A DNA stretch of 64,000 nt from Mobula hypostoma (GCF_963921235.1 NC_086120.1:28830001-28894000), one strand, 5' to 3'; numbered from the stretch's first letter, positions 5,981 to 63,439 are shown. The notes: generated by a model from the sequence alone, not told the origin. A program made the numbers and translations.

Positions 5981-6209
5981 AAACAACAGGAATTCTGCAG
6001 ATGCTGGAAATTCAAGCAACACACATAAAAGTTGCTGGTGAACGCAGCAGGCCAGGCAGCATCTCTAGAAAGAGGTGCAGTCGACATTTCAGGCCGAGAC
6101 CCTTCATCAGGACACCTGACGAAGGGTCTCGGCCTGAAACGTCGACTGCACCTCTTCCTAGAGATGCTGCCTGGCCTGCTGCATTCACCAGCAACTTTTA
6201 TGTGTGTTG
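5981..6209. mobile_element. Penelope-like fold-back element with hammerhead motif (copy A)
   Basis: 95-bp inverted arms at 6017-6111 and 6115-6209; CTGACGA-A-GGGTCTCGGCCT-GAAAC-GTC at 6116-6143; TSD ATGTTRTTTTATCAC at 5966-5980 and 6210-6224. Confidence 0.8.
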
Positions 6210-6286
6210 ATGTTGTTTTATCACTGGTTAAGTTACCCAACTGATTAGAGCTAGCCATTTTAATTATTACTGTTACAAAGAATGAC

Positions 6287-6475
6287 TAGATCAACGTGTT
6301 GATGTCGTGCAGAGGCTTGCATGCTTCAAGGATCCCATCGGGCGATGCCAACTCAGGGCCACACATGTTGGAACGGCTGTAGAATAGATGCCAGACAAAG
6401 ATCGATCCAACCCCGGCTCCCGAACGGACAGACTCATGTCTGCCCCTCCCGGGCCACACTTGCCATACAAAACAA
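6287..6475 (+). mobile_element. Short CpG-rich retroposed element, possibly an RTE-derived non-autonomous element
   Basis: 5' GTCGTGCAGAGGCTTGCATGCTTCAAGGATCC resembles RTE-clade 5' ends; ACAAAACAA tail; flanking repeats GTTACAAAG(AA)TGAC at 6272-6286 and 6476-6488. Confidence 0.4.
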
Positions 6476-7190
6476 GTTACAAAGTGACCACAAAAACACT
6501 GCTGTGAAGAGATTTCTTATACATTCATGTTGATTGGAATAATATGAAAATAATTATTCCCTTCACAGCCAGTGCTGATTCTTGCTGAAATCCAGCTTCA
6601 ACAGGCCAGGCTACCAATCCCTAAGTTGGAAACCAGGTCCACAAGGTATACTGTTATATTAGACTCAGATCCCATGCCATGTTTATATTCACATTGAGCA
6701 GAAGGTAACAGTTAGCAGAAAGATTACCAATTATGAGTTTTCCGCCCTCCAAAGTCAATAACAGTCTAACTGAATACAAACTAACTCAAAAAAAATGTTG
6801 CTGGAAACTTAAAAGGAAGATGTTGGAGATACCAAGCAGGTCAGGCAGCACACCAGACAGAGTTAATGTTTCAGGTATGAAACCTTTTGTCAGAAGAATG
6901 TCAGAGTGTGAAACACTAAAAATCTCTCTCTCTACACATACATTTTTTGAAACTGAATTCTTTGAAATAACTCTTACAACTACTCTAATGGAGATCATAT
7001 ACCACTGTACAAACTGTACTTTGACCCCGAATCCTGCGTTTGAGGTGGTGGGTAACAGATGACCTGGTTAAACCAAATATTTAACTATTACAAGAGCTGC
7101 AGCACTTCAGAACCACTGATTTTAGGCAATAAATGTAAGCTTAGTAGTGTAGTTCAAATCCTGTCAAGAGATAGTTGGAATCATGATGAT

Positions 7191-7196
7191 TTTATT
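7191..7196 (-). terminator. Candidate COPE polyadenylation signal AATAAA
   Basis: TTTATT on the + strand about 280 nt downstream of the COPE stop codon. Confidence 0.55.
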
Positions 7197-7472
7197 GACA
7201 GTTACAATTCAGAAGTTGTTATAACTGATGTTAGAATTTTGTGCAGATTGACAAATCTTATGACCAAAATTAACCTCAAATACAGTCTTTAATATTAAAC
7301 AATAGAGTCTCAAAGAAAGTAATAATTGCTCGCTAGTCACTTTTATACAAGGAATCAGATCCTACGACATTAGTTTTAAATGTACATCCAGAGTTGGGTT
7401 GCTCCAAGGATAAACAGTCCAAGATATTAATTTCTGATCATTTCATCTTCATAGGTATTATTTCCCTTCTTC

Positions 7473-7520
7473 TCATGCACTTGGAGCATACTGCAAAACC
7501 AATCGATCAAATTCGTGCTC
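7473..7520 (-). CDS. COPE: COPE exon 10 coding part ([15 protein letters not shown])
   Basis: CAG acceptor, TGA stop at 7475-7473; conserved C-terminus. Confidence 0.97.
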   Translation of the reverse strand, partial: EHEFDRLVLQYAPSA

Positions 7521-16500: not shown

Positions 16501-19500
16501 ATAAAATTTAAAAAAAAAAGTTAATGCCCTGTTGCAGAAATATTGGAAAGATATTTTTGATATTATTTCAACGGTTTTAAATATAGACTTATAACCGCAT
16601 CCAATTACTGCTATTTTTGGACTACCAATGATAGATTTAAATAATTTAACCTCTTCATCACGAAGAATGATTGCATTTCTTACTTTAATGGCCAGAAGGT
16701 CCATTTTATTGAATTGGAAAGAGATTAATCCTCCTAAGGTATTTCATTGGTTTTCACAAACTATGCTGTGTTTGAATTTGGAGAAAATTAGAAGTGCAGT
16801 TTATGACCCTTCCATCAAGTTTGAAAAAACTTGGAGGCCATTCATTCAGCATTTTCACTTAATGTAATATCTTTATTTCCAAACCTATTCTATTTCTCCG
16901 TATTGTTGTTGGAGGGGAATGGAGTCGTTGGCACTGAGGTTTTCTTCTTTTTCATTTTTAAGTTCTTAGATTTGCCCAAGTCTTTTAGTTTAGTTGCTTA
17001 ATTTTGTCTTTCTTTTGGGTTGGGGTTTTCTTTTTGGTTTTGGTTTTTTTTTCTTTTTCATGTTTTTTTTTTAGTTTTTTTTTGATCTGTTTTATCCGTT
17101 GTTAGTTTTACATGATTGGGAGCTTTGTCAAATTTCAATATTGGACTTTACAATTACTGTTTGTAAGTGTAACAATTTATCTCCTATTATTTGTATCATT
17201 GCTATGTTTTGTTTATATATTCTAAAATTAATAAAGAGATTGAAAAAGAAAAAAGTTAATGCTGAGCTGATATGCAGCTGTGCCAGAAAGAAAATTCTAG
17301 ATAAGTTTGCCTTTCTGTGAAGAAGCTCCTGGTACCAACATGCACATGGGATGGAAAGGATTGAAAGTGGTACAATCAGTCTGCTGTGGAACAGTCAAAT
17401 ACTGTTAAAGTTCATACATAAAGATTAAAGTTCTGTACTTAAATTATTCGAATTTATATTTTCTACAATTGATGTAATTAACATAAATATCAATGAAACA
17501 AAAAGAACAAGGCATGATCTTTTGAGCTTGCTTCATTTAATCAGATCATGGCTCACCTGACTGTAACCTGAAAGCTGCGTTCCTATCTACCAGTGGTAAC
17601 CTTTCACCACTTTCCTATTGAAGTATTTATCTGGATACACACGCGCTACTCCCTCTCCATCAACACAGGGGGCCCCAGGATAATGTGCTGAGCTCGTTGC
17701 TGCATGGACAAACACCCGAATAATTACTTGTCAAGTTCGCCAATGACATGACAGCAGTGGGGCTCATCACCAGCAACGATGAGACAGTTTACAGAGAGGT
17801 GGTTGGAAGAGCTCAAGACCTGGGGCTGAGTTACTTCTTCCCCGATGTCAACAAGACAAAGGAGACCGTCATCAGTTTCAGGAGAACTTGCACCATTCAC
17901 ACCCCTCTTTAAATCAGTGACACAGCAGTGAAATCTGCAAGCAGTTTTAAACTCCTGGGAGGGCACATCGCACACAAACTGTCACGAAGACATTCTACAC
18001 AATCAGGAAAGACCACCGATGCCTCTGCTTGCTGAGGAGGTTGAAGAAAGCTGGACTATACACATCTATACTCTAGTCCTTCTACAGATGTACAGTAGAG
18101 AGCATCCTAACATGCTGCATCACCACATGGTTTGGAAACTGCACTGTGACAGACAGGAAGGCTCTACAACAAGTAGTCAAAACTGGCCAAGGCTTCACCA
18201 GCACCAACCCTACCCACCACCAAAAACATGTATATAGATTACTCCCAGACAAGAGCCAGTAACATTATGAAGGATTCTACCCACCCTGCTCATGGACTGT
18301 GTCCCCCACTATCAGGGAGGCTATGAAGCATCCATGTCAGAACCATAAGGACCACCAGCAGTTACTTTCCCCAAGCAGTATGAATGACCAACACCTCCAC
18401 CCATTAACCCACCACTCCTTTATTGTTTCCTGTCAGAGTCACCTATGTACACACTCTTGTGCCTCACGTCACTTTATGGACAAACAAGTAATCAATGTAA
18501 ATATGCTATCTTATGTATTTATAGTTAGTGTTTGTGTTTAATTATTGTGTTCTAAATTATCTTGTTGTATCACATACAAAATGCTAAAGGATCTCAGCAG
18601 GTCAGGCAGCACCTATGGAAATGAATAGATAGTTGACATTTTGGGCCAAGACCCTTCTTAGTGATTTTTGTGCCGCATCGTAACTGGAGTAACAATCATT
18701 TCATTTTCCTTTACACTTGTGTATTAGAAATAACATTGAATTCAATTGACTTTATTTCTTACATCCTTCACATACATGAGTAAAAATCTTTGTTACATCT
18801 CCATCTAAGTGTGCCACGTGCAATCATAGTAATTTATTGTAAATAGAACAGTCAATGTAATATAGAGCACACTCAAACACAGCGTGAGTTCATCAGTCTG
18901 ATGGCCTGGTGGAAGCAGCAGTCCCGGAGCCTGTTGGTCCTGGCTTTTACGCTGCAGTACCACTTCCTGGATGGTAGCAGCTGGAACAGATTGTGGTTGT
19001 GGTGACTCGGGTCCCCAACGATCCTACGGGCCCTTTTTACACACCTGTCTTTGTAAATGTCCTGAATAGTGGGAAGTTCACAACTACAGATGTGTTGGGC
19101 TATCTGTACCACTCTCTGCAGAGTCCCACAATTAAGGGAGGTACAGTTCCCATACCAGGCAGTGATGCAGCCAGTCAGGATGCTCTCAGTTGTGCCCCTG
19201 GAGAAAGTTCTTAGGATTTGGGGGCCCATAACAAATTTCTTCAACCGTCTGAGGTGAACAAGGCACTGTTGTGCCTTTTTCACCACCCCGCTGGTGTGTA
19301 CAGACCACGTGAGGTCCTCAGTGATGTGGATGCCAAGGAACTTGAAGCTGTTTACCCTCTCAACCCCAGATCCATTAATGTCAATAGGGGTTAGCCCGTC
19401 TCCATTCCTCCTGTAATCCACAACCAGCTTCTTTGTTTTTGAGACACTGAGGGAGAGGCTGTTTTGTTGACACCACTGTGTCAGAGAGATGACTTCTTCC

Positions 19501-28500: not shown

Positions 28501-31500
28501 CTATATTATTCCAAAAATCTACCCATAAATCACAAAATTCCAGGGATGTTCCATCAGGTATGTGATCTAGAAAAAGGTGAAATGTGCCATTACTGCAACA
28601 CCCTACAATTTGAGTTAAATTGCCTCATATTATCTTTTCTTGCTATTATATTGCTCAGTTGACATCAATGTCATGTTTGGTAGTACACAGGCTGGAGTAA
28701 ATGGTGTTGGGAGAGAAAACTGTATTCACTGGACTTTAGAAGGACAAAAGGAGATCTCATTGCACCCTGTCCGAATCTACATGTTTCAACAGACTAGATG
28801 TAGGAAGTAAGCTTTCTCTGGCTGGGTGAAGTGGGGTGAGGTGGCATCTAGAAGTAAGAGTAACAGTTTCAGCACACTGGATAGTTTCTTTAAGATTGAT
28901 GGGGCATATCTTCATTCAGGATGGTGAATCTGTAGAATTCTCTCTGCCACAAAAAGATCTGCAACCAAGTTGATGAATAGATTTGAGGAGATAGACATCT
29001 AAACACCAAAAGCATCAAAGAGGGAGACTACAATAACACAGAGTCAGTCATACAGCATGGACACAGACCCATCAGTCCAATTCACTTATGCCAACTGTGT
29101 TGCCCAGTGAGCTAGTTCCATCTGCTCACACTTGACCTAAAGCCCTTTAAAGCTCTCTTATCCAAGTATTAACCTTAGACAACACACAAGATGCTGCAGG
29201 AACTCAGATCATGCAGCATCTAAGGAGGGGAATAAACATTCAGTGTTTCAGGATGATGAAGGGAAGGTGGTGAATGAAGTGAGAAGTTGGGAGTTGATAG
29301 GTGGAAAGATAAAGGGGTGAAGAAGAATCTGATAGGAGGGAAGAGTGGAAAGGAAGGGTACACCAGGGGGAAGTCGCCTTAAACAGCTATCAGGTACAAA
29401 AGCCATCTTAGACAGCTGTTAAATGTTGCATATATACCAATTTCAACCATTACTTCCGATAGCTAATTACAAATACACACCACCCTGTGCGTGAAGCAGC
29501 TACCTGTTACCCTTTTTACAATTTGCACTTCATCTTAACTCTATGCCCTCATGTTCTTAGCACCCCTTCCCTGGGAAAGAGATTGTTCCATAGACGCTAC
29601 CTGACCTGCTCACCTTCCTCCAGCATTTTGTGTGTGTTGCTCAGATTTCCAGCATCTGCTCATTTTCTCTTGTTACAGGTTACATCAATTCTCTTTTTAC
29701 CCTTGTTTCTTTACAAATTAGTCTTGGCACATTCCAATTCTATCAGTTCTCTTGTGAATTTTACATAAATAATTTAGTGCCCTCAGCCAGTGGCTTTGTT
29801 GCTTTGTTCAAGGTAAATTTATTATGCTTCCTGATGGCAGCAGTGCGAAGAGAGCACGACGTGGTTGATGGGAGTCTTTGATGATGGATGCTGCTTTCCT
29901 TCGACAGTGCTCCACGCAGATGTGCTCAATGGTGAGGAGGGCTTCACCTTTGATGAACTGGACTGTATCCACTACTTTTTGTAGGCTTTTCCATTCAAGA
30001 GCATTGGTATTTCCATACCAGGCTGTGATGTAGCCAGTCAATATACTCTTCACAGCTCATCTACAGAAGTTTGTCAAAGTTTTAGATGATACGCCAAATC
30101 TTTGCAAATTTCTAAGAAATTTGAGGTCGTGCCATGCTTTCTTTGTAATGACACTTATGTGCTAGATTCAGGACAGATTCTCTGAAGTGCTAACACTGGG
30201 GAATTTAAAGTTGCTGACTCTCTCCACCTCTGATCACCTGATGAGAACTGGCTCATGGACCTCTGGTTTCCTCCTCCTGAAGCCAATAAACCTCTTCTTG
30301 GTCTTGCTGACATTCAGTGAGGGGTTGCTGCTGTGGCACCACTCAGCCAGATTTTCATTCTCCTTCCTTTATGCTGATTCGTCACCACCCTTGATTTGGA
30401 CAACAACAGTGATGTCGTCAGAAACTTCAATACGGCACCGGAGCTGTGCTTCTCTTCAGTCAAGAGTGTAAAGCAAGTAGAGCCGGGGACTAACCACACA
30501 GCCTTGTCATGCACCTGTCCTGGGGAAGATTGTGAATATGTTGTTGCCAATCCAAACTGACTAGGGTCTGCAAGTCAGGAAATCAAGGATCCAGTTACAC
30601 AAGGAGGTATTGAGGCTTAGAACTTGAAGGTTCGGGGCCAGTTGGTGGCTCAACGACATCGGCGCCAGACCTGGGAGCGGAGGTTCCCGGGTTCAAAACT
30701 AGTCGGGTCCGCCCCCGAGCATGCTTTCCATCTGTGCCGGGTTGAGTGTCGAGATCACAACTCGACCTCGTAAAATAAGAGGAAAATACTGTGAAAATGT
30801 CTGTGTGAGGAGTGGCGTATCACAGTCTCTCTCTCGCTCCACACCTTGTAAAAAAAAAAGCCATGAAAAAGACATCTTCAGGGATGTACACACGGACACG
30901 CACACACAGATGCGCACGCACGCAGGCACACACCAAAAAAAACTTGAAGGTTCTTGATTAGTTTTGAAGGGATAATAGTATTGAATGCCGAGCTGTAGTC
31001 AATGAATGTATGCATCGTCACAAAATTTGATTCCCCAATAGGTAATAACCTCACATTTATTTGGACAAAACCAATCCTCAGCCCACAAACCTAACTGATC
31101 AAGATCCCTGTAACTACAACACCACCTATTTTAGCATAATCTGCAAATCCTAACACTTATTCATTTAAATCCAAAGCACTTATCTAAATCATGAACAAAG
31201 GTCCCAATACTGACCCCTGTGGCACTGCACCACTATTAAATCTCCATGGTATTGAGATTTCAGATCAGTCACCGAGTAGTGAAGCAGGCTGTAAGGGCTC
31301 AATAGCCTGCTCTTGCACCCATTTCTCTGTGCTTCAATGTTCCTAGAGGATGGACTCATGATCTTAATAGACACCACAGTGCTTCTCTGTCAGAAGATGG
31401 TTCTTGACAGGAAATGCAGAACAAAGTTAATCTGTATTTTTGACTGTTGATGTAAACCTTATAATATCCCATTTAAAGATGAGCATAGTACTCTTCTAGT

Positions 31501-34500: not shown

Positions 34501-37500
34501 ATAAAACTGTTTTCCCTATTGAAAAAGTGAGTAAGCCCTTCATCCAAGTGGTGCTGGCAAAAAAAAAGAAAGCGGGGTCAAGTTCACATTTCAAAACAGA
34601 CAGTAGGAAAAAGTAGCTAGGTGCGTAACATGTAAAATATAAAAAAAACACCAGCTGCTTCACTGTGGGAAGTGGAAATCTGAGGAAACATCTGCCTTGA
34701 CCTACTTGTATGCTTTTCAACTGGGAGCCTCAATGAGTGACTTATAGTCTCTCTCTCTTGAAAATGAGGGGGTAAGGCTGCACATGAAAACACATAAATA
34801 AAAATTTTATTCAATTACAAGAATTGATATAATTATAGTGAACATTGTTCATACCTGTGCAATATAAGCTCTATAAAGGAAAACATCACGCTCAATTTCT
34901 TTCTCAGGATTAGAGACCTGAAAAACACATCAGTTTGTTACGACCATGAAAACAAATATTTTTGCTTGTCAGCACTTAATTCCATCGCTGTGCTTGATCT
35001 TCAGAAAAAAAGTCTTTCAAGGCAATTTAAAAAAAAATCAGATAATGAGTAAGAGATAAAGAGGAAGGTGACCATTACCACATATAGGAAGAGCGCTCAA
35101 AAGCAGAAAGGCTGTAACAAGGTACAGTGTTGCTGACAGGTAGTCTGAGGTACACAGGTGAAAAATGCTGGTGTACCAGACTGTAAGGAGAGACAGTAAA
35201 GTTTGCAGATGACTGAAATACAGCCAATTGAACTAAAGCATGTTGCAAATGACAACATTTTGATGTCAGTATGCTAGCACACAGTGTGTCAAAGAACATC
35301 AATCCACACTTCTATGAAATAAAATGCAGCCAGACGTGTTTAAAATTTGAAGTAAAGGGAAAATGAACTTTACAAATAGGTGAAGAGAAAATGAATTAGG
35401 CTTTAGAGTTACAACTAAAGTACAGAAAAGGATACTTTGGAAAATTGAGTTCGGGCTGATGGAGAAGTTCATCAAAATGTAATGCCAGTTTACGTTCATA
35501 CCAAGCAGTTTACAACGTTAACCCTATGTACAGATTACATTTAGGATTATTCACCCTTTCCAATAAATGGCCAATGAATTCCCGGGCCTGATGACCAGAA
35601 TCTTAGGTGGCTGCTATGGAGAAAGTAGATGCACTGGTTATGTTCATCGAAAATTACATAAATTCCAGCAAAGATAAAGAAGAAACCAGGGAGCTGGAGG
35701 CAGGTTAGCAGCTGTGGGAAACAACATTCCCTCTAAGCTGCACGGTGCACAGCCACACAGTAACTGAAATGCTTCCATGCACACAGCAGCTGGAATTGGG
35801 CGCAGTTAAAAAGTTTACGAAATGTGAAAGATTTTCTTTGTTGTACTGCATTTCATTATACCCTTTAATAAAGAAAATCAAAGTGTGGGATTTTTCAATT
35901 TTCATTTTAAATATTCATAGTATACATATTACAAAAAAAAAGTAACATGCCATGCAGTTTTCAGACCATGTAAAAATCTCCTGCTTAGAGCAATGATTGA
36001 TCCATGCAGCTGTGTAAAAAAAACTGACGGAATGTTGGTGGAAAATAATTCTATGTTTTATTAAGGAAGTTATCACAGGGCACTCAGGAAATAAGACTGG
36101 GTAGAATGAACATAGATTTATAAAATGGAAATCATAATTGGCAGATCTGTTGCTGCAATAATTCACAGAATAGAAAAGGGCATTGCGCATTGGAAAGAGG
36201 GTTTAGAGCTATGTAGACTGGCTAAATGAATGGTCTCCACATAGTTACACATGATGAAACATGTATAAGGACTGTTGTTCAAGTGGACGCCACAGTTGCA
36301 TTGGAGTTAGTGAGACACTGTTTCAGCTCGAGGCATCAGAGTTCAGAGATCAATCCTGGCATCCTTTGTAAGGAGTCCCTGTATGCCTTTCCTGTGGAAT
36401 GCCTTCTCCCACAGTCGAAAGACATACCAGGTTGGCTAACTGATCATTATGAATTGTCCTATGATTGAGCTAGGGTTTAATTGGGGTTGTTGGGTGGTGC
36501 GGCTTGAAGGACTGGAAGGGCCTATTCCATGCTGTATCTCTAAATAAAAAAAATAAAGTTCAAGTTTATTGTTACTGAAACATACACATGCATACTGCTA
36601 AATGAGACAATGTTCCTCTGAACCAAGGTGCACAACACAGTATATGTAACTCACACACAACACAAAGTAAATAGTGTAACACTCCTGGCACTTCTTGCGT
36701 GATAAGACCTGGGTGGCAGCTGGGAGTTCAGTAGTCGTTGTGGCCTGGGGGAGAAGCTGTGTCCCACCCTTACAGTTCTCATCCTAATGCTATGGTACTT
36801 TCTGTCTGATGGTGGTGAGAAAGTTGGGGGGACACTCAAAGAGATTGTTGGACGGATAGGAGGGATCACTGAAAATGCTAATAGCCTTGCATACACAACG
36901 CTCCTGATAAATGGGGCTCCTCTCTGCAGTACTTGCAATCCTTTTGTAGGAACCACGTATCTATTTTCTGAACGCAACCAACAGGAATTCTGCAGATGCT
37001 GGAAATTCAAGCAACACACTTCAAAGTTGCTGGTGAACGCAGCAGGCCAGGCAGCATCTCTAGGAAGAGGTACAGCCGATGTTTCAGGCCGAGACCCTTC
37101 GTCAGGACTAACTGAAGGAAGAGTTAAGTAAGAGATTTGGCAAATCTTACTAACTCTTCCTTCAGTTAGTCCTGACGAAGGATCTCGGCCTGAAACGTCG
37201 ACTGTACCTCTTCCTAGAGATGCTGCCTGGCCTGCTGTGTTCACCAGCAACTTTGATGTGTGTTCCTATCTATTTTCTGTCTGTTTTATATCATGTGTTG
37301 CACATTTTATAGGTTATTGCAATTTGTCACGTGGGTTAGAGCGTGATAGAAGCAAATGAGTATACTTATGCATTCACACTTTGTCTTAGTTTTAGTTTAG
37401 TTAGAGGCAGCCAGGTACAGGGATTTTTTTTGTTGTTCACTAATTATGCTGATTTGAAGACTAGTTGCTCTTATTTCGCCATATCACTAATTTAGTTTCA

Positions 37501-42116: not shown

Positions 42117-42305
42117 ACTACTGGAGGGAAGGGAATTATCGATATTTCTGGTTGAGACCCATCTGACCGTCTCCCCTCTTCGCTATCAGTCCCGATGCAG
42201 CTTTCCAACCAGAAATATCGATAAGTTTTCTCCGCCACAGATGCTACACGACCCGCTGAGTTCCTCCAGCGGATTGGTTGTTGCTCCAAGTTCCAACACC
42301 TGCAG
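42117..42305. mobile_element. Degenerate Penelope-like fold-back fragment just upstream of the COPE promoter
   Basis: Inverted TTATCGATATTTCTGGTTG / CAACCAGAAATATCGATAA; GATGCT...GCTGAGTTCCTCCAGC family motif. Confidence 0.6.
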
Positions 42306-42839
42306 TTATTGAATATGTTTATAGAGATATTTTTGAATGTTGTCAAAACAGCGTTCAGGAACAAGCCGGAAAGTCCGGTTGGGGCTTGGAATCAGGGCAG
42401 GTTCAAAGCCGTAGCTTTGATAGTAATAATGTAATTTCTGGTAATATTACAAAGCATTCTATTCATGGTTGCCTCTGAGCCTGGGCATAAGTTCTAGATC
42501 TACACCCCTTGTGCAAACTGCTTTCATTGTTAGTATTGCTTGTACTGAATGTTTGTGAATGTACACAAACATTTCATGGTCGCAATCTACTGTCAGCTTC
42601 GGCAGCCTGTGAGTTTGAGGACAGGCCTTGCCAGCTGTCTGTACTATGACGGTCGCTATAATGTGCTCAGCCATGGTGAAGTACCGGAAACTGAGCTGCA
42701 GCAGAAGATTGCACCAGGAAATAAACAGTGTAACAGGAGAAGGTGGGCATCTAGTTGGGAAGGCCTGCCTCATTGGGCTGAAGTCCTTTCTACTATTTCA
42801 AGTGGCAGCAAAATGTTATTTCATTATTTCAGAAAGAAA

Positions 42840-43403: not shown

Positions 43404-43404
43404 A

Positions 43405-49364: not shown

Positions 49365-49615
49365 ATCTGTGGGGAGAAAAAGCAAGAGTTAATCTTTCAT
49401 GTTGAAGAGCCTTCCTCAGAACCACAATTTCCAAGAATTCCTACTGTGAAGATGGTCCATTCTTTTCCATCTATCCTGCTTCCTTCACCCACTCCTGATG
49501 GACGGTCTTTGACCTGAAATGTTAATTCCGTTTCTCTTCCCACAGATGCGGCCACACCTGCTGAGTACTTTCCGCACCATCTATTTTTATTTTAGATGTC
49601 CAGCATTTGTATTTT
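49365..49615. mobile_element. Degenerate Penelope-like fold-back element
   Basis: CATCTGTGGGGAGA / TCTTCCCACAGATG inverted; CCTGATGG...GACCTGAAATGTT. Confidence 0.55.
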
Positions 49616-50378: not shown

Positions 50379-53222
50379 GGCTGGTTGGCACACAAATCGA
50401 GAAAGCTTGTAGACAGTGTGAGAGGGAGGATAGGCAGGTGATAGAGAAGGGATGTGCTCAGCCTGATGGTTTGAGATGTGTCTATTTTAATACAAGGAGT
50501 ATCTTGAACAAAGCGGATGAGCTTGGAGCGTGGATCAGTTTATGACGTTGTGGCCATTACAAAGACTTGGATGGCTCAGGGGCAGGAATGGCTACTTAGA
50601 ATGCCAGGCTTTAGATGTTTCAGAAAGGTCAGGGAGGGAGGCAAAAGAGGTGGGGGCATGGCACTGCTAATCAGTGATAGTGTCACGGCTGCAGAAAAGG
50701 AGGAAGTCATGGAGGATAGTCTACTGAATCTGTGGGGGTGGAAGTTAGGAACAGGAAGGGGTCAATAAATCTACTGGATGTTTTTTATAGACCACCCAAT
50801 AGTAACAGGGACATCGAGAAGCAGATAGGGAGACAGATTCTGGAACGGTGCAATAATAACAGGGTGGTCATGATGGGAGATTTTAATTTCCCCAATATTG
50901 ATTAGCATCTCCCTAGAGCAGGGAGTTTAGATGGGGTGGAGTTTGTGAGGTGTATTCAGGAAAGTTTCCTGACACAATATGTAGATAAGCCTACAAGAGG
51001 AAAGGCTGTACTTGATCTGGTATTGGGAAATGAACTTGGTCAAGTGTCAGGTCTCTCAGTGGGAGAGCATTTTGGAGAAAGTGATCACAATTTTATCTCC
51101 TTTACCATAGCATTGGAGAGGGATAGGAACAGACAAGTTAGGAAAGCATTTAATTGGAACTTGGAAGCATAAATTGGGAACAGATGTTCTCAGGGAAATA
51201 TATGGCAGAAATGTGGCGAATGTTTGGGGGATATTTGTGTGGCGTTCTGCATAGGTACGTTCCAATGAGACAGGGAAGAAAGTGGTAGGGTACAGGAACT
51301 AGGGTGTACAAAGGCTGTTGAAAATCTAGTCATGAAGAAAAGATAAGCTTACAAAAGGTTCAAAAAACTAGGTAATGATAGAAATCTAGAAAATTATAAG
51401 GCTAGCCGGAAGGAGCTTAAGAATGAAATTAGGAGAGCCAGAAGGGGCCATGAGAAGGCCTTGGAAGCAGGATAAAGGAAAACCCCAATGCATTCTACAA
51501 GTATGTGAAGAACAAGAGGATAAGACGTGAAAGAATAGGACCACTCAAGTGTGACAATGGAAAAGTGTGTATGGAACCGGAGAAGATAGCAGAGGTACTT
51601 AATGAATACTTTGCTTCGGTATTCACTAGGGGAAAGGATCATGGCGATTGTAGGGATGACTTACAGCGGACTGAAAAGCTTGAGCATATAGACATTAAGA
51701 CAGACGATACGCTAGAGCTTTTGGAAAGCATCAAGTTTGATAAGTCACAGGGACCGGACGAGATGTACCCCAGGCTACTGTGGGAGGCGAGGGAGGAGAT
51801 TGCTGAGCCTCTGGTAATGATTTTTGCATCATCAATGGAGACAGGAGAAGTTCTGGAGGATTAGAGGGTTGTAGATGTTGTTTCCTTATTCAAGAAAGGG
51901 AGTAGAGATAGCCCAGGAAATTATAGACCAGTGAGTCTTGCTTTAGTGGTTGTAAGTTGATCGAGAAGATGCTGAGAGACAGGATTTATGAACATTTGGA
52001 GAGGCATAATATGATTAGGAATAGTCAGCATGGCTTTGTCAAAGGCAGGTCGTGCCTGATGGAGCCTGATTGAATTTCTTGAGGTTGTGACTAAACACAT
52101 TGATGAAGGTAGAGTAGTAGATGTAGTATATATGGATTTCAGCAAGGCATTTGATAAGTTACCCCATGCCATGCCTATTGAGAAAGTAAGGAGGCAAGAG
52201 ATCCAAGGGGACATTGTTTTGTGGATCCAGAAATGGCTTGCCCACAGAAGACAGAGAGTGGTTGTAGATGGGTCATATTCTGCATGGAGGTTGGTGACCA
52301 GTGGTGTGCCTCAGGGATCTGTTCTGGGACCTCTTCTCTTCATAATTTTTATAAAGTACCTGGATGAGGAAGTGGAAGGATGGGTTAGTAAATTTGCTGA
52401 TAACACAAAGGTTGGGGGTGTTGTGGATAGTTTGGGGGGCTCTCAGAGGTTACAACAGAACAGCGATAAGATGCCATCTGGGCTGAGAAGTAGCAGATGG
52501 AGTTCAACCCAGTTAAGTCGAGGTGGTTCATTTTGGTAGGTCAAATATGATGGCAGAATATAGTATTAATGGTAAGACTCTTGGCAGTGTGGAGGATCAG
52601 AGGATCTTGGGGTCTGAGTCTATAGGACGCTCACAACCATGGGATTGAGTTCAAGAGCCAAGAGGTGATGTTACAGCTTTATAGGACCCTGGTCAGACCC
52701 CACTTGGAGTACTAAGTTCTGGTCACCGCACTACAGGAAGGTTGTGGAAACTAGAAAGGGTGCAGAGGAGATTTACAAGGATGTTGCCTGGATTGGGGAG
52801 CATGCCTTATGAGAACAGGTTGAGTGAACTTGGCCTTTTCTCCATGGAGCGATGGAGGAAGAGAGGTGCCCTGATAGAGGTGTATAAGATGATAAGAGGC
52901 ATTGATCGTATGGATAGTCAGAGGCGTTTTTCCAGGGTTGAAATGGCTAACACGAGAGGGCACAGTTTTAAGGTGCTTGGAAATAGATACAGAGATATCA
53001 GGGGTAAGTTTTTATGCAGAGAGTGGTGAGTGCATGGAATGGGCTGCCAGTGATGGTGGTGGAGCCGGATACAATAGGATCTTTTAAGAGACTCCTGGAT
53101 AGGTACATGGAGCTTAGAAAACTAGAGGGCTAAGGGTAACCCTAGGTAATTTCTAAAGTAAGTACATGTCTGGCACAGTTTTGTGGGCTGAAGGGCCTGT
53201 ATAGTGCTTTAGGTTCTCTATG
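50379..53222 (+). mobile_element. CR1 LINE, near full ORF2, degenerate
   Basis: ORFs with [59 protein letters not shown]. Confidence 0.9.
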
Positions 53223-53356
53223 GAAATGATCAGGCAACGTTTCATGACAAAGGGTTCCGGCCTGAAACGTTGACTGAGGATGCTGCCTGACCTGCTGAGT
53301 TTCTCCAGCGTGTTGTGAGTGTTGCTTTGACCCCAGCATCTGCAGATTATTTTGTG
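53223..53356 (+). mobile_element. Older Penelope-like terminal fragment inserted in a CR1 tail
   Basis: ATGACAAAGGGTTCCGGCCTGAAACGTTGAC...CCAGCATCTGCAG; TSD TTTAGGTTYTCTATG at 53208-53222 and 53357-53371. Confidence 0.7.
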
Positions 53357-53584
53357 TTTAGGTTTTCTATGTTTTGTGAAAAGTAAGAATTTCAGGTTGT
53401 ATACTGTATACATCCTCTGATATTCAATTGAACTATTGAACTTGAATAATCATTCTCTTGAAGCTGTTGTGCAGAGTCAGCATTTTCTGGTTTTATTATA
53501 CAGTACATTTTTGTATCTGCAGCATTTTCTTCCTACATCACCATTTAGTTTTAATTATTTCAAATCAAACAGTTTAGTTTTCAA

Positions 53585-53819
53585 GCAACATACATCAAAG
53601 TTGCTGGTGAACGCAGCAGGCCAGGCAGCATCTATAGGAAGAGGCGCAGTCGACGTTTCAGGCCGAGACCCTTCGTCAGGACTAACTGAAGGAAGAGGGT
53701 CTCGGCCTGAAACGTCGACTGCGCCTCTTCCTATAGATGCTGCCTGGCCTGCTGCGTTCACCAGCAACTTTGATGTATGTTGCTTGAATTTCCAGCATCT
53801 GCAGAATTCCTGTTGTTTG
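53585..53819. mobile_element. Penelope-like fold-back element with hammerhead motif (copy C)
   Basis: Perfect 93-bp arms at 53580-53672 and 53696-53788; 14-bp TSD AGTTTAGTTTTCAA at 53571-53584 and 53820-53833 (the left TSD overlaps the arm by a few nt). Confidence 0.82.
53648..53683 (-). ncRNA. Minimal type-I hammerhead ribozyme motif (PLE type)
   Basis: Minus strand reads AGUC|CUGACGA|A|GGGU-CUCG-GCCU|GAAAC|GUC|GACU: stem I AGUC/GACU, conserved core, stem II, palindromic ACGU in place of helix III, GUC cleavage triplet. Confidence 0.7.
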
Positions 53820-54194
53820 AGTTTAGTTTTCAAAGTTATTTTAAATCAATGTATTTTAAACTATCCCACTTTGTTCTTTTAAACTTACTCTCGAATCTGG
53901 AGTCAGATACAGGTCAGACCAGACAAGCATGGAATACTTCCTTTCCTGAAGGACATTAACAATTTAGACATGTTTCTATGACTACCTAATAATTGCTGTT
54001 TCCCATTACTAAAACTAGCTTTTTCTTAACCTCAACTACTTACCTTTACTTACTTTTAAATTCCCCAGTAACCAGGAGATGATTTGAACCAAGGATCCAG
54101 AATTCGAGATATGATTCCAATAATTTAACTTCCATACCAATTTATCCCCATATTACTCACCCCAAAGTAGAGTTACCTGTGAAATCTTCAAATC

Positions 54195-57876: not shown

Positions 57877-57879
<3 letters not shown>

Positions 57880-57909
<30 letters not shown>
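57880..57909. repeat. (TA)n microsatellite
   Basis: About 15 TA units. Confidence 0.95.
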
Positions 57910-57910
<1 letters not shown>

Positions 57911-58992
57911 CTCAAAGTTCTCATATTTAAGTACAATATGCAAGAATATCAAACCAAAGTTCATTTGTATATAATATAAATGTACAATAAGGAATTTATG
58001 TGGAGTTGTGAGGTAGAGATGATCTAATAAAACAGCACTTTCAGCTACAATATGCACATTGAGTGTAAATTTGGTTGCAACCAGTAAATCCTCTTTCAAG
58101 GAAAAACAAATGAAAAGTCATAATTTAAAATAAAAAACATTTTTGTAATGTATCTTCAAGACAGCTTTTCTGGACCAGCAACTTCTATTTATGTTGAGCC
58201 TTGAAAACCCAATCTACTCAACTAGAGAATTAGCAAACAAATTTCCACACTGAGCATAAATATCGGGATAAATGAACTAAACTTACAGCAAAAGCTTGGT
58301 TTCAACATTCACATTAAAAGAGAGAGAGGTAGAGGAGAGGATGTAATGAGAGTATCCCGGAGTATAGAATCATGGATGATGAATTATGGAAAGTAAACCA
58401 TGGTGGAAGCATGGAAGTTGGAAATGCAAATCACCAGAATTGAAGGTGCAGAGATCTCAGACCACTGTGGAGCTGAAAATTATGTTTACAGAAAAATGTT
58501 GAGAACTCTGGGTTCAAAAACAGAATTAGATGCCAATTATGCAAATAAATATAGGGAGTTAGGCTGAAGTTAAAAAAGCATGACCTCTAGGGTTCTAATC
58601 TCTGGATTACTCACTTTGCCACACATTCGTGAGGGCAGGAATAGGACAGAGCAAATGAATGCATGGTTGAACAGCTGGTATAGGTAGGAGTAATTCAATT
58701 TTTTTTTGCTATTGGGATCTCTTCTGGGGCAGGAGAGGGACAGGTTGCATGTGAAGTAGATGGGGATCAATACCCTGGCAAGATATGCTAGAACTACTTG
58801 AGTAAGTTTGAACTGGTCTGGCAGGGAAGTGGGACCCAAAGTAGTACTGTAGCAGATGTGAAAGATGAAGCAAATAAAAAGGTTAGAGCGATCAAGGCCA
58901 GATAACGGCAGCACAGGCAGCAAGGAAGGTCTGACAGGTGTATTAAAAGCAAAAGGGTAATTAGGAATAGAGTAATGATCAGTGTGCTTATA

Positions 58993-59115
58993 CAGACCAC
59001 CCAGAGGAAACCCATATGTTCATAGGGAGGACGTACAAACTCCTCACATATGGGATCGGAATTGAACTCCGAACTCTGATGCCCCGAACTGCAATAGCAT
59101 CACACTAATTGCTGT
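58993..59115 (-). mobile_element. V-SINE 5' fragment
   Basis: GGAAACCCA...GGGAGGACGTACAAACTCC...GGAATTGAACTC is the reverse complement of a V-SINE head. Confidence 0.55.
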
Positions 59116-60399
59116 GGAGCTGTGGGAAATGGGTGAGGTTTTAAATGAAGACTTCTCATCTTCATTTATTGTGGAGGGCATGGAAGCTAGTGAGTTTAGT
59201 GATGCCTTGAAGAATATTGACAATATGAAGTTGGAGATGTTGGCAGTTTTGAATCACATAAAAAGAGGACAACTCCCCAGGGCCTGACTGGATGCAAATT
59301 AAATATGTAGCAAGCAAGAGAGTGCTGGGGTCCCAGCAGAGATTTTTGTAATTTCATTCTCCACTGGTGAGGTACCAGAAAATTGGAGAATGACTAATGT
59401 GCCGTTATTTAAGAAGGGCTATAAGGATAAGTCAGTAAGTTTCAGACCAGTAAGCCTTACAACAGTGGTGGATAAGACAGTGGAAGGGATTCCAAAGAAC
59501 AAGATTTACATTAATTTAGAAAGGAAATGACTAATTAGGGATTGTCAATATGGCTTTGTTTATGGGAGCTCATGCCTCACAAATTTGATTTAAATGTTCT
59601 GAGAAGGTAGCTTAAAGGATTGATGAGGGTAGAGTGGTAAACGTTGTCTACATGAACTTCAGCAAGGTATTTGACAAAGTCCTGCATGTTACCCTAGTCC
59701 AGAAAGATAGAGTATAGGGATCCAGGGCAAACTGGATACAAAATAGGCTCAGTAGGAAGAGGCAGAAGGTGATAGTGCAGAATGCTTTTCAGATTAGAAA
59801 CCTATGACCTGTGTTGTGCTGCCAGGATTGGTGCTGGATCCTTTATTGTTTGTCATGTATATTAATAATTTGGAAGAGAATATAGGAGACATGATTAGTA
59901 AGTTTACAGGTTGTCGAAGGTTACAATAGGATCTAGATCAACTGGGAAAGTAACAAGGGCGATAGAATTTATGCCGACAAGTGCAAAGAATTGCACTTTG
60001 GGAAAGTAAACCAGTTCAGACCATACACACAGTGAATACCAGGGCCATGGGGAGTGTTACTGAACAGCAAGACCTAGGTGTACAAGTTATATAGTTCCCT
60101 GAAAATGTTAACATAGGTATACTGAGTTGTGAAGGTGTATGATGTGCTTGTCTACATTGGCTGAGTATTGAAGTTCATACATATTCATAGAGTTGTACAA
60201 ATGATTGGTTAGGCTGCCTTTGGAGTATTGTGTGCATTTCTGGATGTAATTTTGCTAAAGAGGGTGAATAGAAGATTCACAGGAACATTCCTTGAACTGG
60301 ACAGCTTAAGTTATAACAGGCTGGGCCTGTTTTCTCTGGAGGGAAGCATGGTGAGAGACGACTTTACAGAGGTTCATAAAACGATGAGGGGCATGGATA

Positions 60400-60558
60400 G
60401 TCGAATCACAAAACATGGGAAAACCCAAGCAACACACACAAAATGCTGGAGTAACTCAGGTCCTGATGAAGGGTCTTAGCCTGAAACATTGACTGTTTAC
60501 TTTTTCCCATAGATGCTGCCTGGCCTACTTAGTTCCTCCTGCATTTTGTGTGTGTTGC
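60400..60558. mobile_element. Older Penelope-like fold-back element inserted in a CR1
   Basis: GCAACACACACAAAATGC / GCATTTTGTGTGTGTTGC inverted ends; GTCCTGATGAAGGGTCTTAGCCTGAAACATTGAC; TSD AGGGGCATRGATA at 60387-60399 and 60559-60571. Confidence 0.7.
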
Positions 60559-63439
60559 AGGGGCATAGATAAGGTTGATAGTCGCAATGGTGGTTGAGAC
60601 AGGTACAATATCTAAGAGATATTTTAACAAGTACATGGACAGGAACTTTTTAAAAGAATGCAGACAAATGGGATTAACATAGATAGCCATCTTCAAGAGC
60701 ATGGATGATTTGGGCCAAAGCCCTGTTTCTGTCCTGTATAACTATGCATTAAGAATGTTCATAAGTCCATAGCTGCATGGGATTTCTTTATAATAAGGAA
60801 ACAACACTGCATGATTTGTCTCACCATTGTAATTAGTGTTGGATCATTTAAAAATTTGAGTAGTTGCACGATTTAAAGAAAATCTTTATGATTTATTACA
60901 ATTGAAAAGCTACTCAGTTCAGGTGCAAGAAATACACTTGACCTTGTATTTTACTATCAGTAAGGCTGTTTGACAAAACAATGTTGCCTCATCCAACATT
61001 ATTTCTCCCCAGATGTTCTAACTCATGTTAGATTATATCCCCATGACACCATTCTAGTACCTTACCATTCATATGAGCATGTTAATTGGTGAATTAGATT
61101 CAGCAACTGGATGCATGCAATCAAGAATAGGACCCTCGGAAACTTTTATCCTTCTGATGTAGTCCAGAACCTCTGAAGAATAATAGGGCCACTGTATACT
61201 TCTTTACATCCCAAACCATTGGATATTTTATATCCATCTCAGATCCAAGTGGTGAAAAAAAAAGAACAGTTAAAGTTACAACTCAAAAAGGACAATAAGC
61301 TTCCCAAAAGGGAGGTCCATCAAAAAAATGCCTAAAGTTATCAGATTTGTCTTTATATAATGACTTTGAACAAAAAAGTCTTAAGGAAACTTTAAAGCTT
61401 ATATGATTTCCATGAGCACTAAATAGTCCAGGCCTACTGGTCGCAGGAGAGAAAAGTCTGACATTTCATAGATTTTTCACACCTTTCCATTTTCAAGAGA
61501 CAAAAATACCTTTACAGACTGGTCCATTATATACTTAGCAGCTAACATTTGATTGTGCTTACATTACTATGAATTAGTGAAAATAATGCACAGGATACTG
61601 CAAACTGGGGTTTAATTCAAGTATCTGTAATCTAAATACTGTTAAGACCTGTGCTCGTTACAGTGGATCAGATTTAGGGAGAATATGGGAAAAGTTATGT
61701 TTATACAAAGACTGGCAAAACAGATAGTGTTAATCCTAGCATTGCATTTCTATGCAGATATTTTGGGGAAGATTTATCGCTGCCAATTTTCTGCCTTTAT
61801 TTCCTGAAGGTGTTGACTCAGTTGGGAATAAAGTTCCTGCACCTTGCTCAACTAACTGAATTTTACGCACGAGCATAACATTAACCCAATATTAACTGGG
61901 AAGAAGGCCCTACTTTGTCTGATCCTGTCCAAAGCTGATATCGCCATATGGTCATTCCACCAGGAATCTCTGTGAAACAACAGGGGCAGGAACTAGAGCT
62001 CATTTCCTACCTCTCCAGTAATGTGAAAAGGTGACTGGTTGTTAGAGTCTGACTGATGCCTTTAAATGTTACTCTCAATTACAAGGATCAACTCTACTTG
62101 TTGCTCCATCTCCAGGAGTAGCCATACATAATCATAATCTCAGAAGCAGGGAAAGTAGTCAGAATAGATGAATCCCTCAACAGCTTCATGCATGAAACTC
62201 TGAATACAACTTCTCCATACCAGAAGCAGTCTTACAAACAGGTTCTTTGTATTTAGTGCCCAAAGATTGGGAATACAGGACTGAAGAGCAATCAAAAATT
62301 GTAGAGCATCCCCTTCAATTGATGTCTCAGTTGCAAACATATAGATCCTTGGATATTACATGTTTCATATACATTCTAACCTGTTTAACACAATCAGTGT
62401 GCTGCCTAACTAACCACAGAAATACTATTTTACACAAAACTACAGGTTTACCCTTCGATTTCTGATAGCTTTGCTCAGAATATCACTGTGGTGACTGGCT
62501 CAGTGTCAAAGGTCTAAAGTTAAATATACAAAAGGAGAGAATAAAAAAAGGCAGGACAACTTAATCCAGAATGTTATAGAAAACTGAGATATGTTCACAA
62601 GCAAGACTATTGAAGTGATGGCTAAAGCGCATTCAAGAGGCAAGTGAGTGAATAAGTGAATTCAATTGAATAAGTGAGAAAGGATTGAGATCTGTGATGA
62701 TAATACACAGGGAGATTGAAATAATCCACTTGTAAGATAGCGTTTTTTCCTGTTCTTAATAATTCTTGTGTTAAAACGGTTTATGCCAATATTAGTCATA
62801 AAACTAAAAGTTTGACAAATGTATATTCATTGTGATTACATGAATGTTAAATGTTTTATCACATGCATTTTAATACTACATGGAAGGACCTAAAAAGAGC
62901 AAGCAAAACACAGCAAGATTCAATCCTAGTAGCATTAGTATTTGTCTAGAATGAAATTCTAAGGAGAAATTCAGTGATTTCATGCTCCCAGGGATTAGCT
63001 AAACTCACACATGCGTATATGAGAATTAATGTTGCAACTCCATCTTTATTGACCATCCACAGTGGTTTCAAACAAGCTTATTGGGAATATACTGTATGAA
63101 CACCTAACTAAACCAATAGTACCCAACTATGAAAAGCCCATGGCACTTTTAAGTTTAGAGTTTTTTTTAATATGCACTAGACTAAAGGAATATTGATTTT
63201 CTCCTGGGGTGAAATATATAAAACATATATTACTGTGCCCTTTTACAGAACTTATAATGAGATATAGTCTATTATTGAATGTATGATATGGCTCCTTCTT
63301 CCATGTTAACCCTAGATCAGGTAAAACAGCCTCTCTCACAAGAATATCTAAGTGAGAGACGTATTACGGAAAGGATGAAAAAAGGCTATACTGCATTACC
63401 CAATATTCACAGCGTGTAGATTTTGTCATTTCCATAGTC

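What the first reader, a model, noticed from the sequence alone, without database searches (positions are those of the whole stretch)
5981..60571. Family of fold-back retroelements carrying minimal hammerhead ribozyme motifs in their inverted arms
Seen: three young copies (5981-6209, 36971-37266, 53585-53819) and several older ones (42117, 49365, 53223, 57200, 60400, also about 6795, 18572, 29181/29583) share one sequence family. Copy C's minus strand (53683->53648) reads AGUC-CUGACGA-A-GGGU(CUCG)GCCU-GAAAC-GUC-GACU, a complete hammerhead core with stems I and II. Helix III is replaced by the palindrome ACGU. Six copies have 13-15 bp TSDs and none has coding capacity. Known: minimal type-I hammerheads that cleave as dimers occur in the pseudo-LTRs of Penelope-like elements. 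Inference: this is an abundant non-autonomous, ribozyme-bearing PLE derivative (retrozyme-like). Copies A and B have the motif, slightly mutated, in both arms, so transcription in either direction yields a hammerhead motif, while the full hairpin could sequester it.
Basis: partly seen in the sequence, partly recalled or inferred. Interest (0 to 1): 0.85.

Follow-up and report, generated by a model that had tools for sequence, protein, structure and literature searches.

The report
Penelope retrotransposon ends inserted as hairpins
These small hairpin repeats in a ray genome are most likely dead, heavily shortened insertions of the end piece of a Penelope-like jumping gene, each laid down as two mirror-image copies in one event and carrying that element's known minimal hammerhead motif, so this is a tidy, recently active example of a known kind rather than a new class.

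Summary
Copies A (5981-6209), B (36971-37266) and C (53585-53819) sit exactly where stated. Each has two inverted arms, a 36-40 nt extension ("tail") at one end only, and a 13-15 bp target-site duplication (TSD).

A complete minimal hammerhead stands at 53648-53683(-) and 37168-37203(+). None appeared in 200 simulated windows.

A public DNA contig joins 53570 directly to 53820. So copy C went in as one event and is polymorphic.

Head-to-head 5'-truncated copies, a one-sided 30-40 bp tail, variable TSDs and a minimal hammerhead with a palindromic helix III are published hallmarks of Penelope-like elements (PLEs).

The hairpins do not propagate as hairpins and are not retrozyme-like:
- The arm junction differs in every insertion.
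- Both arms of a copy share private variants.
- No tandem copies occur.

Limits: no RT/GIY-YIG partner lies in this window, cleavage is untested, and stem covariation among the 13 arm segments aligned is no better than shuffles.

Other windows of this genome were flagged earlier in this scan for the same family. Verdict: a new member of a known kind, of modest interest.

The parts
5966..5980 (.). Copy A, left TSD (15 bp, 1 mismatch to 6210-6224)
5981..6016 (-). Copy A tail: 36-nt 3' extension present on this arm only
6017..6111 (-). Copy A tailed arm (sense on minus strand). Hammerhead boxes at 6083-6110 with one C-to-U change at 15.2.
6115..6209 (+). Copy A tail-less arm. Intact core boxes at 6116-6143, but the helix I 5' strand is truncated at the junction.
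6210..6224 (.). Copy A, right TSD
36958..36970 (.). Copy B, left TSD (13 bp, perfect; partner 37267-37279)
36971..37009 (-). Copy B tail, about 5 nt longer at its outer end than in A and C (heterogeneous start of reverse transcription)
37010..37126 (-). Copy B tailed arm. Hammerhead boxes at 37078-37105 with a G-to-A change at 16.2.
37151..37266 (+). Copy B tail-less arm with a complete minimal hammerhead at 37168-37203
53571..53584 (.). Copy C, left TSD (14 bp, perfect; partner 53820-53833). The empty-site contig holds this sequence only once.
53585..53696 (-). Copy C tail-less arm (sense on minus strand) with a complete minimal hammerhead at 53648-53683. It extends about 23 nt further 5' than the other arm.
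53697..53783 (+). Copy C tailed arm, 5'-truncated inside helix II
53784..53819 (+). Copy C tail (36 nt). Its first 5 nt match the target site, so the boundary of the other arm is ambiguous by 5 nt.
60400..60558 (.). Older copy. 60400-60458(-) is a diverged tail plus a 31-nt arm; 60459-60558(+) is a 100-nt tail-less arm starting 3 nt before CUGA. TSD 60387-60399 / 60559-60571.
53223..53356 (.). Older copy: a short inverted internal fragment (about 22 nt), then a sense arm plus tail on the + strand. TSD 53208-53222 / 53357-53371.
49365..49609 (.). Old diverged head-to-head copy (minus arm about 49365-49425; plus arm with tail 49479-49609)
42126..42306 (.). Old head-to-head copy of a subfamily in which ACGU is AUAU and GUCGAC is AUCGAU in both arms
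29178..29672 (.). Old inverted pair: a tail-less minus arm at 29178-29252 and a tailed plus arm at 29586-29672, with unresolved sequence between
18572..18659 (-). Old single arm with decayed boxes (CCCAAAAU in place of CCUGAAAC). It lies about 60 nt beyond a LINE 3' end and is not part of that LINE.
6816..6895 (-). Old single arm with hammerhead-like boxes

Best explanation
Each 'fold-back element' is one insertion event made by the machinery of a Penelope-like element (PLE). Two heavily 5'-truncated DNA copies of the same 100-160 nt 3'-terminal (pLTR) module of the PLE RNA are joined head-to-head inside one 13-15 bp TSD.

One copy starts at the downstream reverse-transcription start and so carries the 36-40 nt tail. 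In five of the seven or so inverted pairs the other ends at the tail boundary, as expected for the upstream start.

The most likely route, which is inferred, follows the in-vitro behaviour of the anole element PAc. The RT-endonuclease nicks both target strands, primes cDNA on each from RNA of one source element, and the two cDNAs are joined by a template jump. Some copies may instead arise by self-priming.

The hammerhead is the PLE's own minimal, dimer-dependent ribozyme, about 65 nt from the 3' end, so even very short copies keep it. In these copies it is a passenger. A transcript across the whole insertion would fold into a roughly 100-bp duplex in which the ribozyme cannot form. The copies have no ORF and no sign of propagating further.
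For: Shown:
1. One event. A 1624-nt DNA contig of run X1 joins 53570 to 53820 with no mismatch and one TSD copy. It lacks exactly the 235-bp element plus one TSD. A contig of run X5 runs from the tail into the flank, so that run has the filled site.
2. Every copy where both arms are readable has exactly one tail: A, B, C, 60400, 53223, 42126, 29178 and 49365.
3. In A, B, C, 60400 and 29178 the tail-less arm ends at the tail boundary, within a few nt.
4. Junctions differ in every insertion: A at -3/-1, B about -45/-45, C -18/+9, 60400 -3/+75, counted from C3 of CUGA. More than 400 different joints appear among public contigs.
5. In C and 60400 each arm holds sequence the other lacks, so neither arm can be a pure copy of the other.
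6. Arms of one copy share 2-4 private variants against other copies. Within-copy differences are 0 (C), 4 (A) and 6 (B), mostly CpG transitions.
7. The minimal hammerhead is complete in two arms, with 0 of 200 simulated windows giving a hit. The hammerhead block is better conserved between old subfamilies (0.43-0.73 pairwise identity) than the adjoining spacer and upstream sequence (0.32-0.36).
8. Up to 206 contigs continue 5' of copy C's junction with one consensus, so the parent is longer than these copies.

From the literature:
- Inverted pLTRs head-to-head with a 31-bp tail on one of them and a TSD (PMC3846280).
- An inverted 5'-truncated copy and a 30-40 bp tail at one end (PMC8557442).
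- Nicking and extension of both strands, and two RT start sites that delimit the tail (PMC11167929).
- Minimal hammerheads in pLTRs with an extra nucleotide after A9 and palindromic 15.2-16.2, and paired motifs on opposite strands 100-700 bp apart (PMC4209133).
Against: - No PLE ORF is in the window. All RT remnants have KFADDT and, where readable, an AP endonuclease, so they are LINEs, and no GIY-YIG motif was found. The link to an autonomous PLE therefore rests on anatomy, the literature and unchecked notes from other windows.
- Rfam's hammerhead models give no hit even at E up to 10.
- Stem covariation among 13 arms is no better than shuffles: 75.5% of cells paired against 77.4%.
- Cleavage could not be tested, because all public runs are held as contigs only.
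- All roughly 18 arms are shorter than about 190 nt, and five start within 3 nt of the hammerhead's 5' edge. That would also fit a dedicated short template RNA.
- The symmetric junctions in A and B fit self-priming as well.
- An asymmetric deletion at the palindrome centre after insertion could mimic unequal truncation.
- Two old copies (53223, 49365) have a tail-less arm that ends internally, not at the upstream start site.
Confidence: 0.75

Rival explanations
1. A dedicated non-autonomous element: a short single-arm RNA (hammerhead, conserved box, stem-loop, tail) with its own defined 5' end is the usual template. It is mobilised in trans by a PLE, in the manner of a SINE. The hairpin would still be made at insertion.
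For: All arms in the window are shorter than about 190 nt. The 5' ends cluster 1-3 nt before CUGA in A (both arms), 60459, 42126 and 53242. Six of the 15 best-supported joints in public contigs also break at -2/-3. pLTR sequences alone suffice for integration in trans in rotifers (PMC3846280). Retrozymes are argued to be PLE-dependent (bioRxiv 10.64898/2026.07.22.740005).
Against: Arms of B, C, 49479 and 42186 start well upstream of that point, and up to 206 contigs continue further 5' with a shared consensus, so longer templates exist. No promoter was identified. Part of the joint cluster may only reflect subfamily divergence upstream of -4.
Confidence: 0.2
2. The hairpins arise by self-priming (snap-back) of a single cDNA, as proposed for rotifer Penelope, rather than by reverse transcription on both target strands.
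For: Junctions in A and B are symmetric to within 2 nt. Arms are identical at insertion. Palindromes at inverted junctions were read this way in PMC3846280.
Against: In C and 60400 the tail-less arm holds 23 and about 70 nt that the tailed arm lacks, while the tail is unique to the other arm. The tail-less arm ends at the tail boundary in five copies, as expected for a second RT start site. I saw no self-complementary microhomology at the junctions of A, C or 53223 on reading them.
Confidence: 0.2
3. The hairpin itself is the replicating unit, a fold-back retroelement or retrozyme-like RNA copied as a whole.
For: High copy number: 33,591 and 85,717 contig pieces at least 90% alike in two DNA runs. 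A hammerhead motif is readable on either strand.
Against: No two insertions share a junction. Private variants are mirrored in both arms. The tail makes the ends unequal. There are no tandem arrays. The RNA would be a duplex of about -200 kcal/mol.
Confidence: 0.03
4. A SINE-like element mobilised by an L2/CR1-type LINE through a shared 3' stem-loop.
For: A weak match of the tail to the UnaL2 3' element (15.9 bits, E 2.7). TSDs of LINE-like length. Two copies lie just downstream of LINEs in the same orientation.
Against: The match is far below the gathering score of 55. The LINE 3' end at about 18735 is separate from the neighbouring copy and unlike it. No LINE end in the window matches the family profile. 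LINE-driven insertion does not give head-to-head duplicates with a one-sided tail.
Confidence: 0.04
5. A MITE or Foldback-type DNA transposon with terminal inverted repeats.
For: Long inverted arms and small size.
Against: TSD length varies (13, 13, 14, 15, 15 bp) and has no consensus. The ends are unequal because of the one-sided tail. The inner junction varies between copies while the outer ends are fixed. The arm content is a PLE-type hammerhead module.
Confidence: 0.01

Closest known systems
Inverted pLTR insertions of Penelope-like elements (Evgen'ev and Arkhipova 2005, as cited in PMC8557442; PMC3846280; PMC8557442)
   Same: Head-to-head inverted 5'-truncated copies, a 30-40 bp tail at the 3' end of only one of them, a short TSD around the whole unit, and a hammerhead in the terminal repeat.
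   Different: Here nothing lies between the inverted ends: there is no ORF and no direct pLTR pair. The arms are only 30-160 nt. TSDs are 13-15 bp, against the 8-10 bp reported for rotifers. The host is a ray, for which I found no description.
Minimal hammerheads of metazoan PLEs (Cervera and de la Pena 2014, PMC4209133; Lunse et al. 2016, cited in PMC6765202 but not readable here)
   Same: Type I layout, a 4-5 bp helix I, an extra A between A9 and helix II, helix III reduced to the palindrome ACGU, and massive dispersal as single or oppositely oriented motifs near truncated PLEs.
   Different: Helix II is short (3-4 bp including wobbles, tetraloop CUCG) rather than the 6-8 bp typical of published families. 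Position 11.1 is U in the young copies and C in 21-28% of contig depth.
PAc, the Poseidon element of Anolis carolinensis (Frangieh et al. 2024, PMC11167929)
   Same: Two adjacent internal RT start sites whose spacing equals the tail, both target strands used, AT-rich targets, and a hammerhead upstream of the start sites that is not needed for insertion.
   Different: In PAc the ORF begins inside the hammerhead and the start sites lie within the ORF. Here the only ATG frame downstream of the hammerhead stops at the first tail codon, by reading the sequence. In these genomic copies the two start sites are used one per arm, which was not reported in vitro.
Non-LTR retrozymes (PMC7229834; bioRxiv 10.64898/2026.07.22.740005)
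   Same: Non-coding, a type I hammerhead, probably PLE-dependent.
   Different: Retrozymes are head-to-tail tandem repeats that give circular RNAs. These are single palindromic insertions with TSDs and no tandem copies.
Twin priming in L1 insertions (Ostertag and Kazazian 2001; from my own knowledge, not read here)
   Same: The second target strand also primes reverse transcription, giving an inverted segment inside one TSD.
   Different: Twin priming inverts an upstream part of one RNA without duplicating it. Here both arms cover the same region.

Membership tests
Penelope-like element insertion | ORF with telomerase-like RT and GIY-YIG endonuclease sharing these ends | tested here: not met
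   No such ORF is in the window. All RT remnants are KFADDT LINEs, with AP endonuclease where readable, and there is no GIY-YIG motif. The rest of the genome could not be searched with these tools. Short non-coding copies are not expected to carry the ORF.
Penelope-like element insertion | Inverted, head-to-head 5'-truncated copies within one insertion | tested here: met
   Single-event insertion shown by the empty-site contig.
Penelope-like element insertion | 30-40 bp tail at one end only | tested here: met
   A 36-40 nt tail on exactly one arm in all 8 readable insertions.
Penelope-like element insertion | Short TSD of variable length | tested here: met
   13, 13, 14, 15 and 15 bp.
Penelope-like element insertion | Direct pseudo-LTRs (partial tandem) | tested here: not met
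   No same-strand adjacent copies. This is expected if only the terminal module was copied.
Hammerhead ribozyme, minimal PLE type | Core CUGANGA ... GAAA ... UH with helices I and II | tested here: met
   Complete at 53648-53683(-) and 37168-37203(+), with 0 of 200 simulated windows giving a hit. The minimum-energy fold of the isolated segment forms helices I and II.
Hammerhead ribozyme, minimal PLE type | Extra nucleotide between A9 and 10.1, and palindromic 15.2-16.2 | tested here: met
   The A after CUGACGA, and ACGU (AUAU in both arms of the 42126 copy).
Hammerhead ribozyme, minimal PLE type | Stem covariation across copies | tested here: inconclusive
   Two pairs show changes on both sides (2.1-1.1 C-G to U-A; 15.2-16.2 C-G to U-A), but overall pairing is not above shuffles. 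The rows are decayed copies, not masters.
Hammerhead ribozyme, minimal PLE type | Self-cleavage after GUC, as a dimer or with protein | not testable with these tools
   Only assembled contigs are held for all runs, so RNA ends cannot be read.
Hammerhead type I (Rfam covariance models) | Score against the curated model | tested here: not met
   No hammerhead hit at the gathering threshold or at E up to 10 on copy C. The models expect a helix III.
Non-LTR retrozyme | Head-to-tail tandem repeats of the hammerhead unit | tested here: not met
   all pairs are head-to-head.
MITE / Foldback DNA transposon | Fixed TSD length and symmetric termini | tested here: not met
   Variable TSDs and a one-sided tail.

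The most novel reading that the evidence does not exclude
The mini-palindromes may be a natural record of an obligatorily paired integration. On this reading a dimeric PLE particle reverse-transcribes two RNAs of one source element on the two target strands. It uses the two RT start sites in a fixed complementary way, always giving one tailed and one tail-less arm, and then joins the cDNAs head-to-head. A discrete RNA 5' end just before the ribozyme core may define a short dedicated template. That would turn an in-vitro observation into a rule of PLE integration in vivo.
Probability: 0.3. Interest if true: 0.55.

Novelty: new member of a known kind. Interest (0 to 1): 0.3.

Why it matters
- It shows a Penelope-like lineage that is active now, or was very recently, in a ray: copy C is present in some sequencing runs and absent in another.
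- It provides thousands of minimal, easily read insertion products. From these the unusual PLE integration steps could be measured in vivo: use of both strands, the two start sites, and the joining of the cDNAs.
- It is a caution for annotation. These hairpins can be mistaken for MITEs or microRNA precursors (a mir-3926 model scores 51 bits on copy C), and they inflate genome-wide hammerhead counts with dead copies.
- Where transcribed, they would give long perfect double-stranded RNA.

Tried and rejected
- Rfam, whole window at gathering threshold and copy C at E up to 10: no hammerhead family. The only strong hit, mir-3926, reflects the perfect hairpin. The UnaL2 hit is insignificant.
- Autonomous partner in the window: Pfam on 20 ORFs, then RT and GIY-YIG motif scans in six frames. 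Only LINEs were found.
- The idea that the module is the 3' end of the neighbouring LINEs was rejected after reading 18440-18920.
- Two scans of metagenome contigs for the hammerhead module and the conserved box: no match.
- Literature search for the exact motif, and for Penelope with Mobula: nothing. Lunse et al. (PMC5785218) is not held. The supplements of PMC4209133 are not held.
- RNA test of cleavage: no run is kept as raw reads, and the putative RNA runs only show that the repeat is abundant while the unique flanks are empty.
- Covariation count: uninformative.
- Splicing test for the 3' splice-site-like motif: the loose ends at position -6 in RNA contigs turned out to resemble LINE coding sequence, not an upstream exon. 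The idea is left open.
- This scan's notes by sequence returned nothing.

Full report
**What is there.** Each has the same anatomy:
- two inverted arms of 95, 117 and 93 nt that are 96%, 95% and 100% complementary;
- a 36-40 nt extension on one arm only;
- a flanking direct repeat of 15, 13 and 14 bp.

I call 'sense' the strand that ends with the extension. On that strand each arm reads, 5' to 3':
- a hammerhead-like block;
- a variable spacer;
- a conserved box (AGAUGCUGCCUGRCCUGCUG);
- a small stem-loop (GCAAC...GUUGC);
- on one arm only, the tail.

A profile built from the six arms finds about eleven insertions in the 64 kb, of very different ages. Seven or so are head-to-head inverted pairs and the rest are single arms or fragments (my alignment). 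The window is vertebrate-like in CpG depletion (observed/expected 0.29). Earlier notes of this scan call the genome a devil ray; I did not check that.

**The hammerhead motif.** My own descriptor of the published minimal hammerhead finds complete motifs only at 53648-53683(-) and 37168-37203(+), and none in 200 simulated windows of the same first-order composition.
- The motif has the published peculiarities of PLE hammerheads: an extra nucleotide after A9 and a palindromic 15.2-16.2 step (PMC4209133).
- The isolated segment folds with helices I and II in the minimum-energy structure.
- Between old and young subfamilies the hammerhead block is better kept (pairwise identity 0.43-0.73) than the spacer and the upstream sequence (0.32-0.36). 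It is about as well kept as the downstream box (0.75).
- One old subfamily has AUAU for ACGU and AUCGAU for GUCGAC in both arms, so the palindromes are retained.
- Among tens of thousands of contig pieces, the only frequent variant inside the motif is U11.1 to C (21-28% of depth). That restores the canonical G10.1-C11.1 pair. Because CCCG holds a CpG, CCUG and the dead CCCA form seen at 18659 are its two decay products.

Against this:
- Rfam's hammerhead models do not match at all.
- A formal count of pairs over 13 arms shows no covariation beyond shuffles.
- Nothing here shows cleavage.

**One insertion event, recent.** When DNA contigs of public runs are laid on 53380-54050, one 1624-nt contig of run X1 matches 53395-53570 and then continues at 53820-54050 without a single mismatch at the joint. 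It lacks exactly one TSD copy plus the 235-bp element, so it is the empty site. A contig of run X5 runs from inside the tail (53799) into the right flank with no mismatch, which is the filled site. The whole unit (two arms plus tail) therefore went in at once and made a 14-bp duplication. It is polymorphic among the sequenced animals, which fits the zero differences between its arms.

The same runs hold 33,591 and 85,717 contig pieces at least 90% alike, and the unique flanks have almost no depth. The family is therefore very abundant, and four differently labelled organisms hold it.

**Why the hairpin is made anew each time.** Four observations point the same way.
- *Different junctions.* The junction between the arms differs in every insertion. 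Counting from C3 of CUGA, the arms start at -3 and -1 (A), about -45 and -45 (B), -18 and +9 (C), and -3 and +75 (60400). The 53223 copy has only a 22-nt inverted fragment. Public contigs show more than 400 different joints between the two arms.
- *Mirrored private variants.* The two arms of a copy share private variants: 2-4 positions are fixed in both arms of one copy and different in both arms of another. Differences within a copy number 0, 4 and 6, mostly CpG transitions. A hairpin master could not acquire mirrored changes by point mutation, so both arms are copied from a single-arm template at insertion. This agrees with another note on this window (s1-144889).
- *Each arm has unique sequence.* In C and in 60400 each arm holds sequence the other lacks: the tail on one, 23 or about 70 inner nucleotides on the other. 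Neither arm can be a mere copy of its partner, unless an asymmetric deletion at the palindrome centre followed insertion.
- *Longer parent.* Up to 206 contigs continue 5' of C's junction with one shared consensus, so the parent element is longer than any copy here.

**What makes it.** This anatomy is the published signature of Penelope-like elements.
- The inverted 5'-truncated copy and the 30-40 bp one-sided tail are listed as general PLE features (PMC8557442).
- The anole element PAc nicks and extends both target strands in vitro. It starts reverse transcription at two adjacent internal sites whose spacing is the tail, and its hammerhead is protein-assisted and not needed for insertion (PMC11167929).
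- Minimal hammerheads sit in PLE pLTRs, and pairs on opposite strands 100-700 bp apart were already noted (PMC4209133).

The copies here add some detail:
- The outer end of the tailed arm varies by a few nucleotides; B is about 5 nt longer.
- In five insertions the tail-less arm ends within a few nucleotides of the tail boundary.
- Every readable insertion has exactly one tail.

The best reading is two reverse transcriptions on the two target strands, one from each start site, on RNA of one source element, joined head-to-head. Self-priming, proposed for rotifers, remains possible for the symmetric copies A and B.

**What is missing.** The window has no PLE ORF. All RT remnants carry KFADDT and, where readable, an AP endonuclease, so they are LINEs. 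No GIY-YIG motif is present. A suspicion that the module is the 3' end of those LINEs was removed by reading the LINE end at about 18735, which is separate and unlike it. The UnaL2 match of the tail is noise (15.9 bits against a threshold of 55). Unchecked first-reader notes from other windows of this genome report hammerhead copies linked to GIY-YIG remnants and a 6.2-kb palindromic Penelope insertion. These are leads, not evidence.

**Function.** The inserted hairpins are best seen as dead-on-arrival by-products. A transcript across copy C would fold at about -200 kcal/mol into a duplex of roughly 100 bp, so the ribozyme could not form. The ribozyme's role, if any, lies in the master element's transcript, as a dimer or with protein help. 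The elements are not retrozyme-like because no tandem copies occur.

**Verdict.** The PLE origin and the nature of the ribozyme motif are supported by anatomy and the literature. The 'fold-back family / retrozyme-like' reading is not supported. This is a new member of a known kind. It has some value as a clean natural data set on PLE integration and as evidence of current activity in a ray. The same family was flagged by this scan in several other windows of this genome.

Noticed in passing
window 53571-53819; contig of run X1: There is an empty-site allele: one public DNA contig joins 53570 to 53820 exactly, so copy C is a presence/absence polymorphism among the sequenced animals. Another run (X5) holds the filled site.
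   Followed up: partly
window 37151-37170(+) and 53680-53696(-), plus contig loose ends at 53697: Directly upstream of helix I the sense strand reads UACUAAC, then a pyrimidine tract, then CAG. This is a textbook branch point and 3' splice site ending 6 nt before CUGA. In Drosophila virilis Penelope an intron also ends at the 5' edge of helix I (PMC4209133). I found no splicing evidence here.
   Followed up: partly
arm starts at 6112-6116, 60459, 42163-42170, 53245; joints at 53680-53682: The 5' ends of arms cluster 1-3 nt before CUGA: 5 of about 14 arms, and 6 of the 15 best-supported contig joints. No arm in the window and none of the 15 joints listed starts at the predicted cleavage site. 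Cause unknown: a discrete RNA 5' end, an RT stop, or an effect of subfamily divergence on mapping.
   Followed up: no
sense arm box (e.g. 53735-53754) and tail (53793-53800): The best-conserved block of the family is not the hammerhead but AGAUGCUGCCUGRCCUGCUG. Part of it can pair with CAGCAUCU/CAGCA in the tail, closing a three-part fold around the GCAAC/GUUGC stem-loop where the upstream start site lies. This is a possible RT recognition structure. No covariation was seen.
   Followed up: partly
window 53643-53725, both strands: The Rfam mir-3926 model scores 51 bits (E 4e-9, below the gathering score of 82) on the perfect hairpin. This is a likely source of false microRNA calls in this genome.
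   Followed up: no
window 18873-19562(-), 20711(+), 39268-39709(+), 43494-46242(-), 50517-52539(+): Five remnants of LINEs with a KFADDT RT motif. Two of these have AP-endonuclease matches and two have an ALKBH8_N-like stretch after the RT.
   Followed up: partly
window 60387-60399 / 60559-60571: The 60400 copy sits inside LINE coding sequence (AGGGGCATGGATA, part of a common LINE motif). Contigs with an arm abutting similar LINE sequence recur in RNA-labelled runs.
   Followed up: no
window 29253-29585: Between the two arms of the old 29178/29586 pair lies a purine-rich stretch and unrelated sequence that I could not assign. It may be a longer, decayed copy or a secondary insertion.
   Followed up: no
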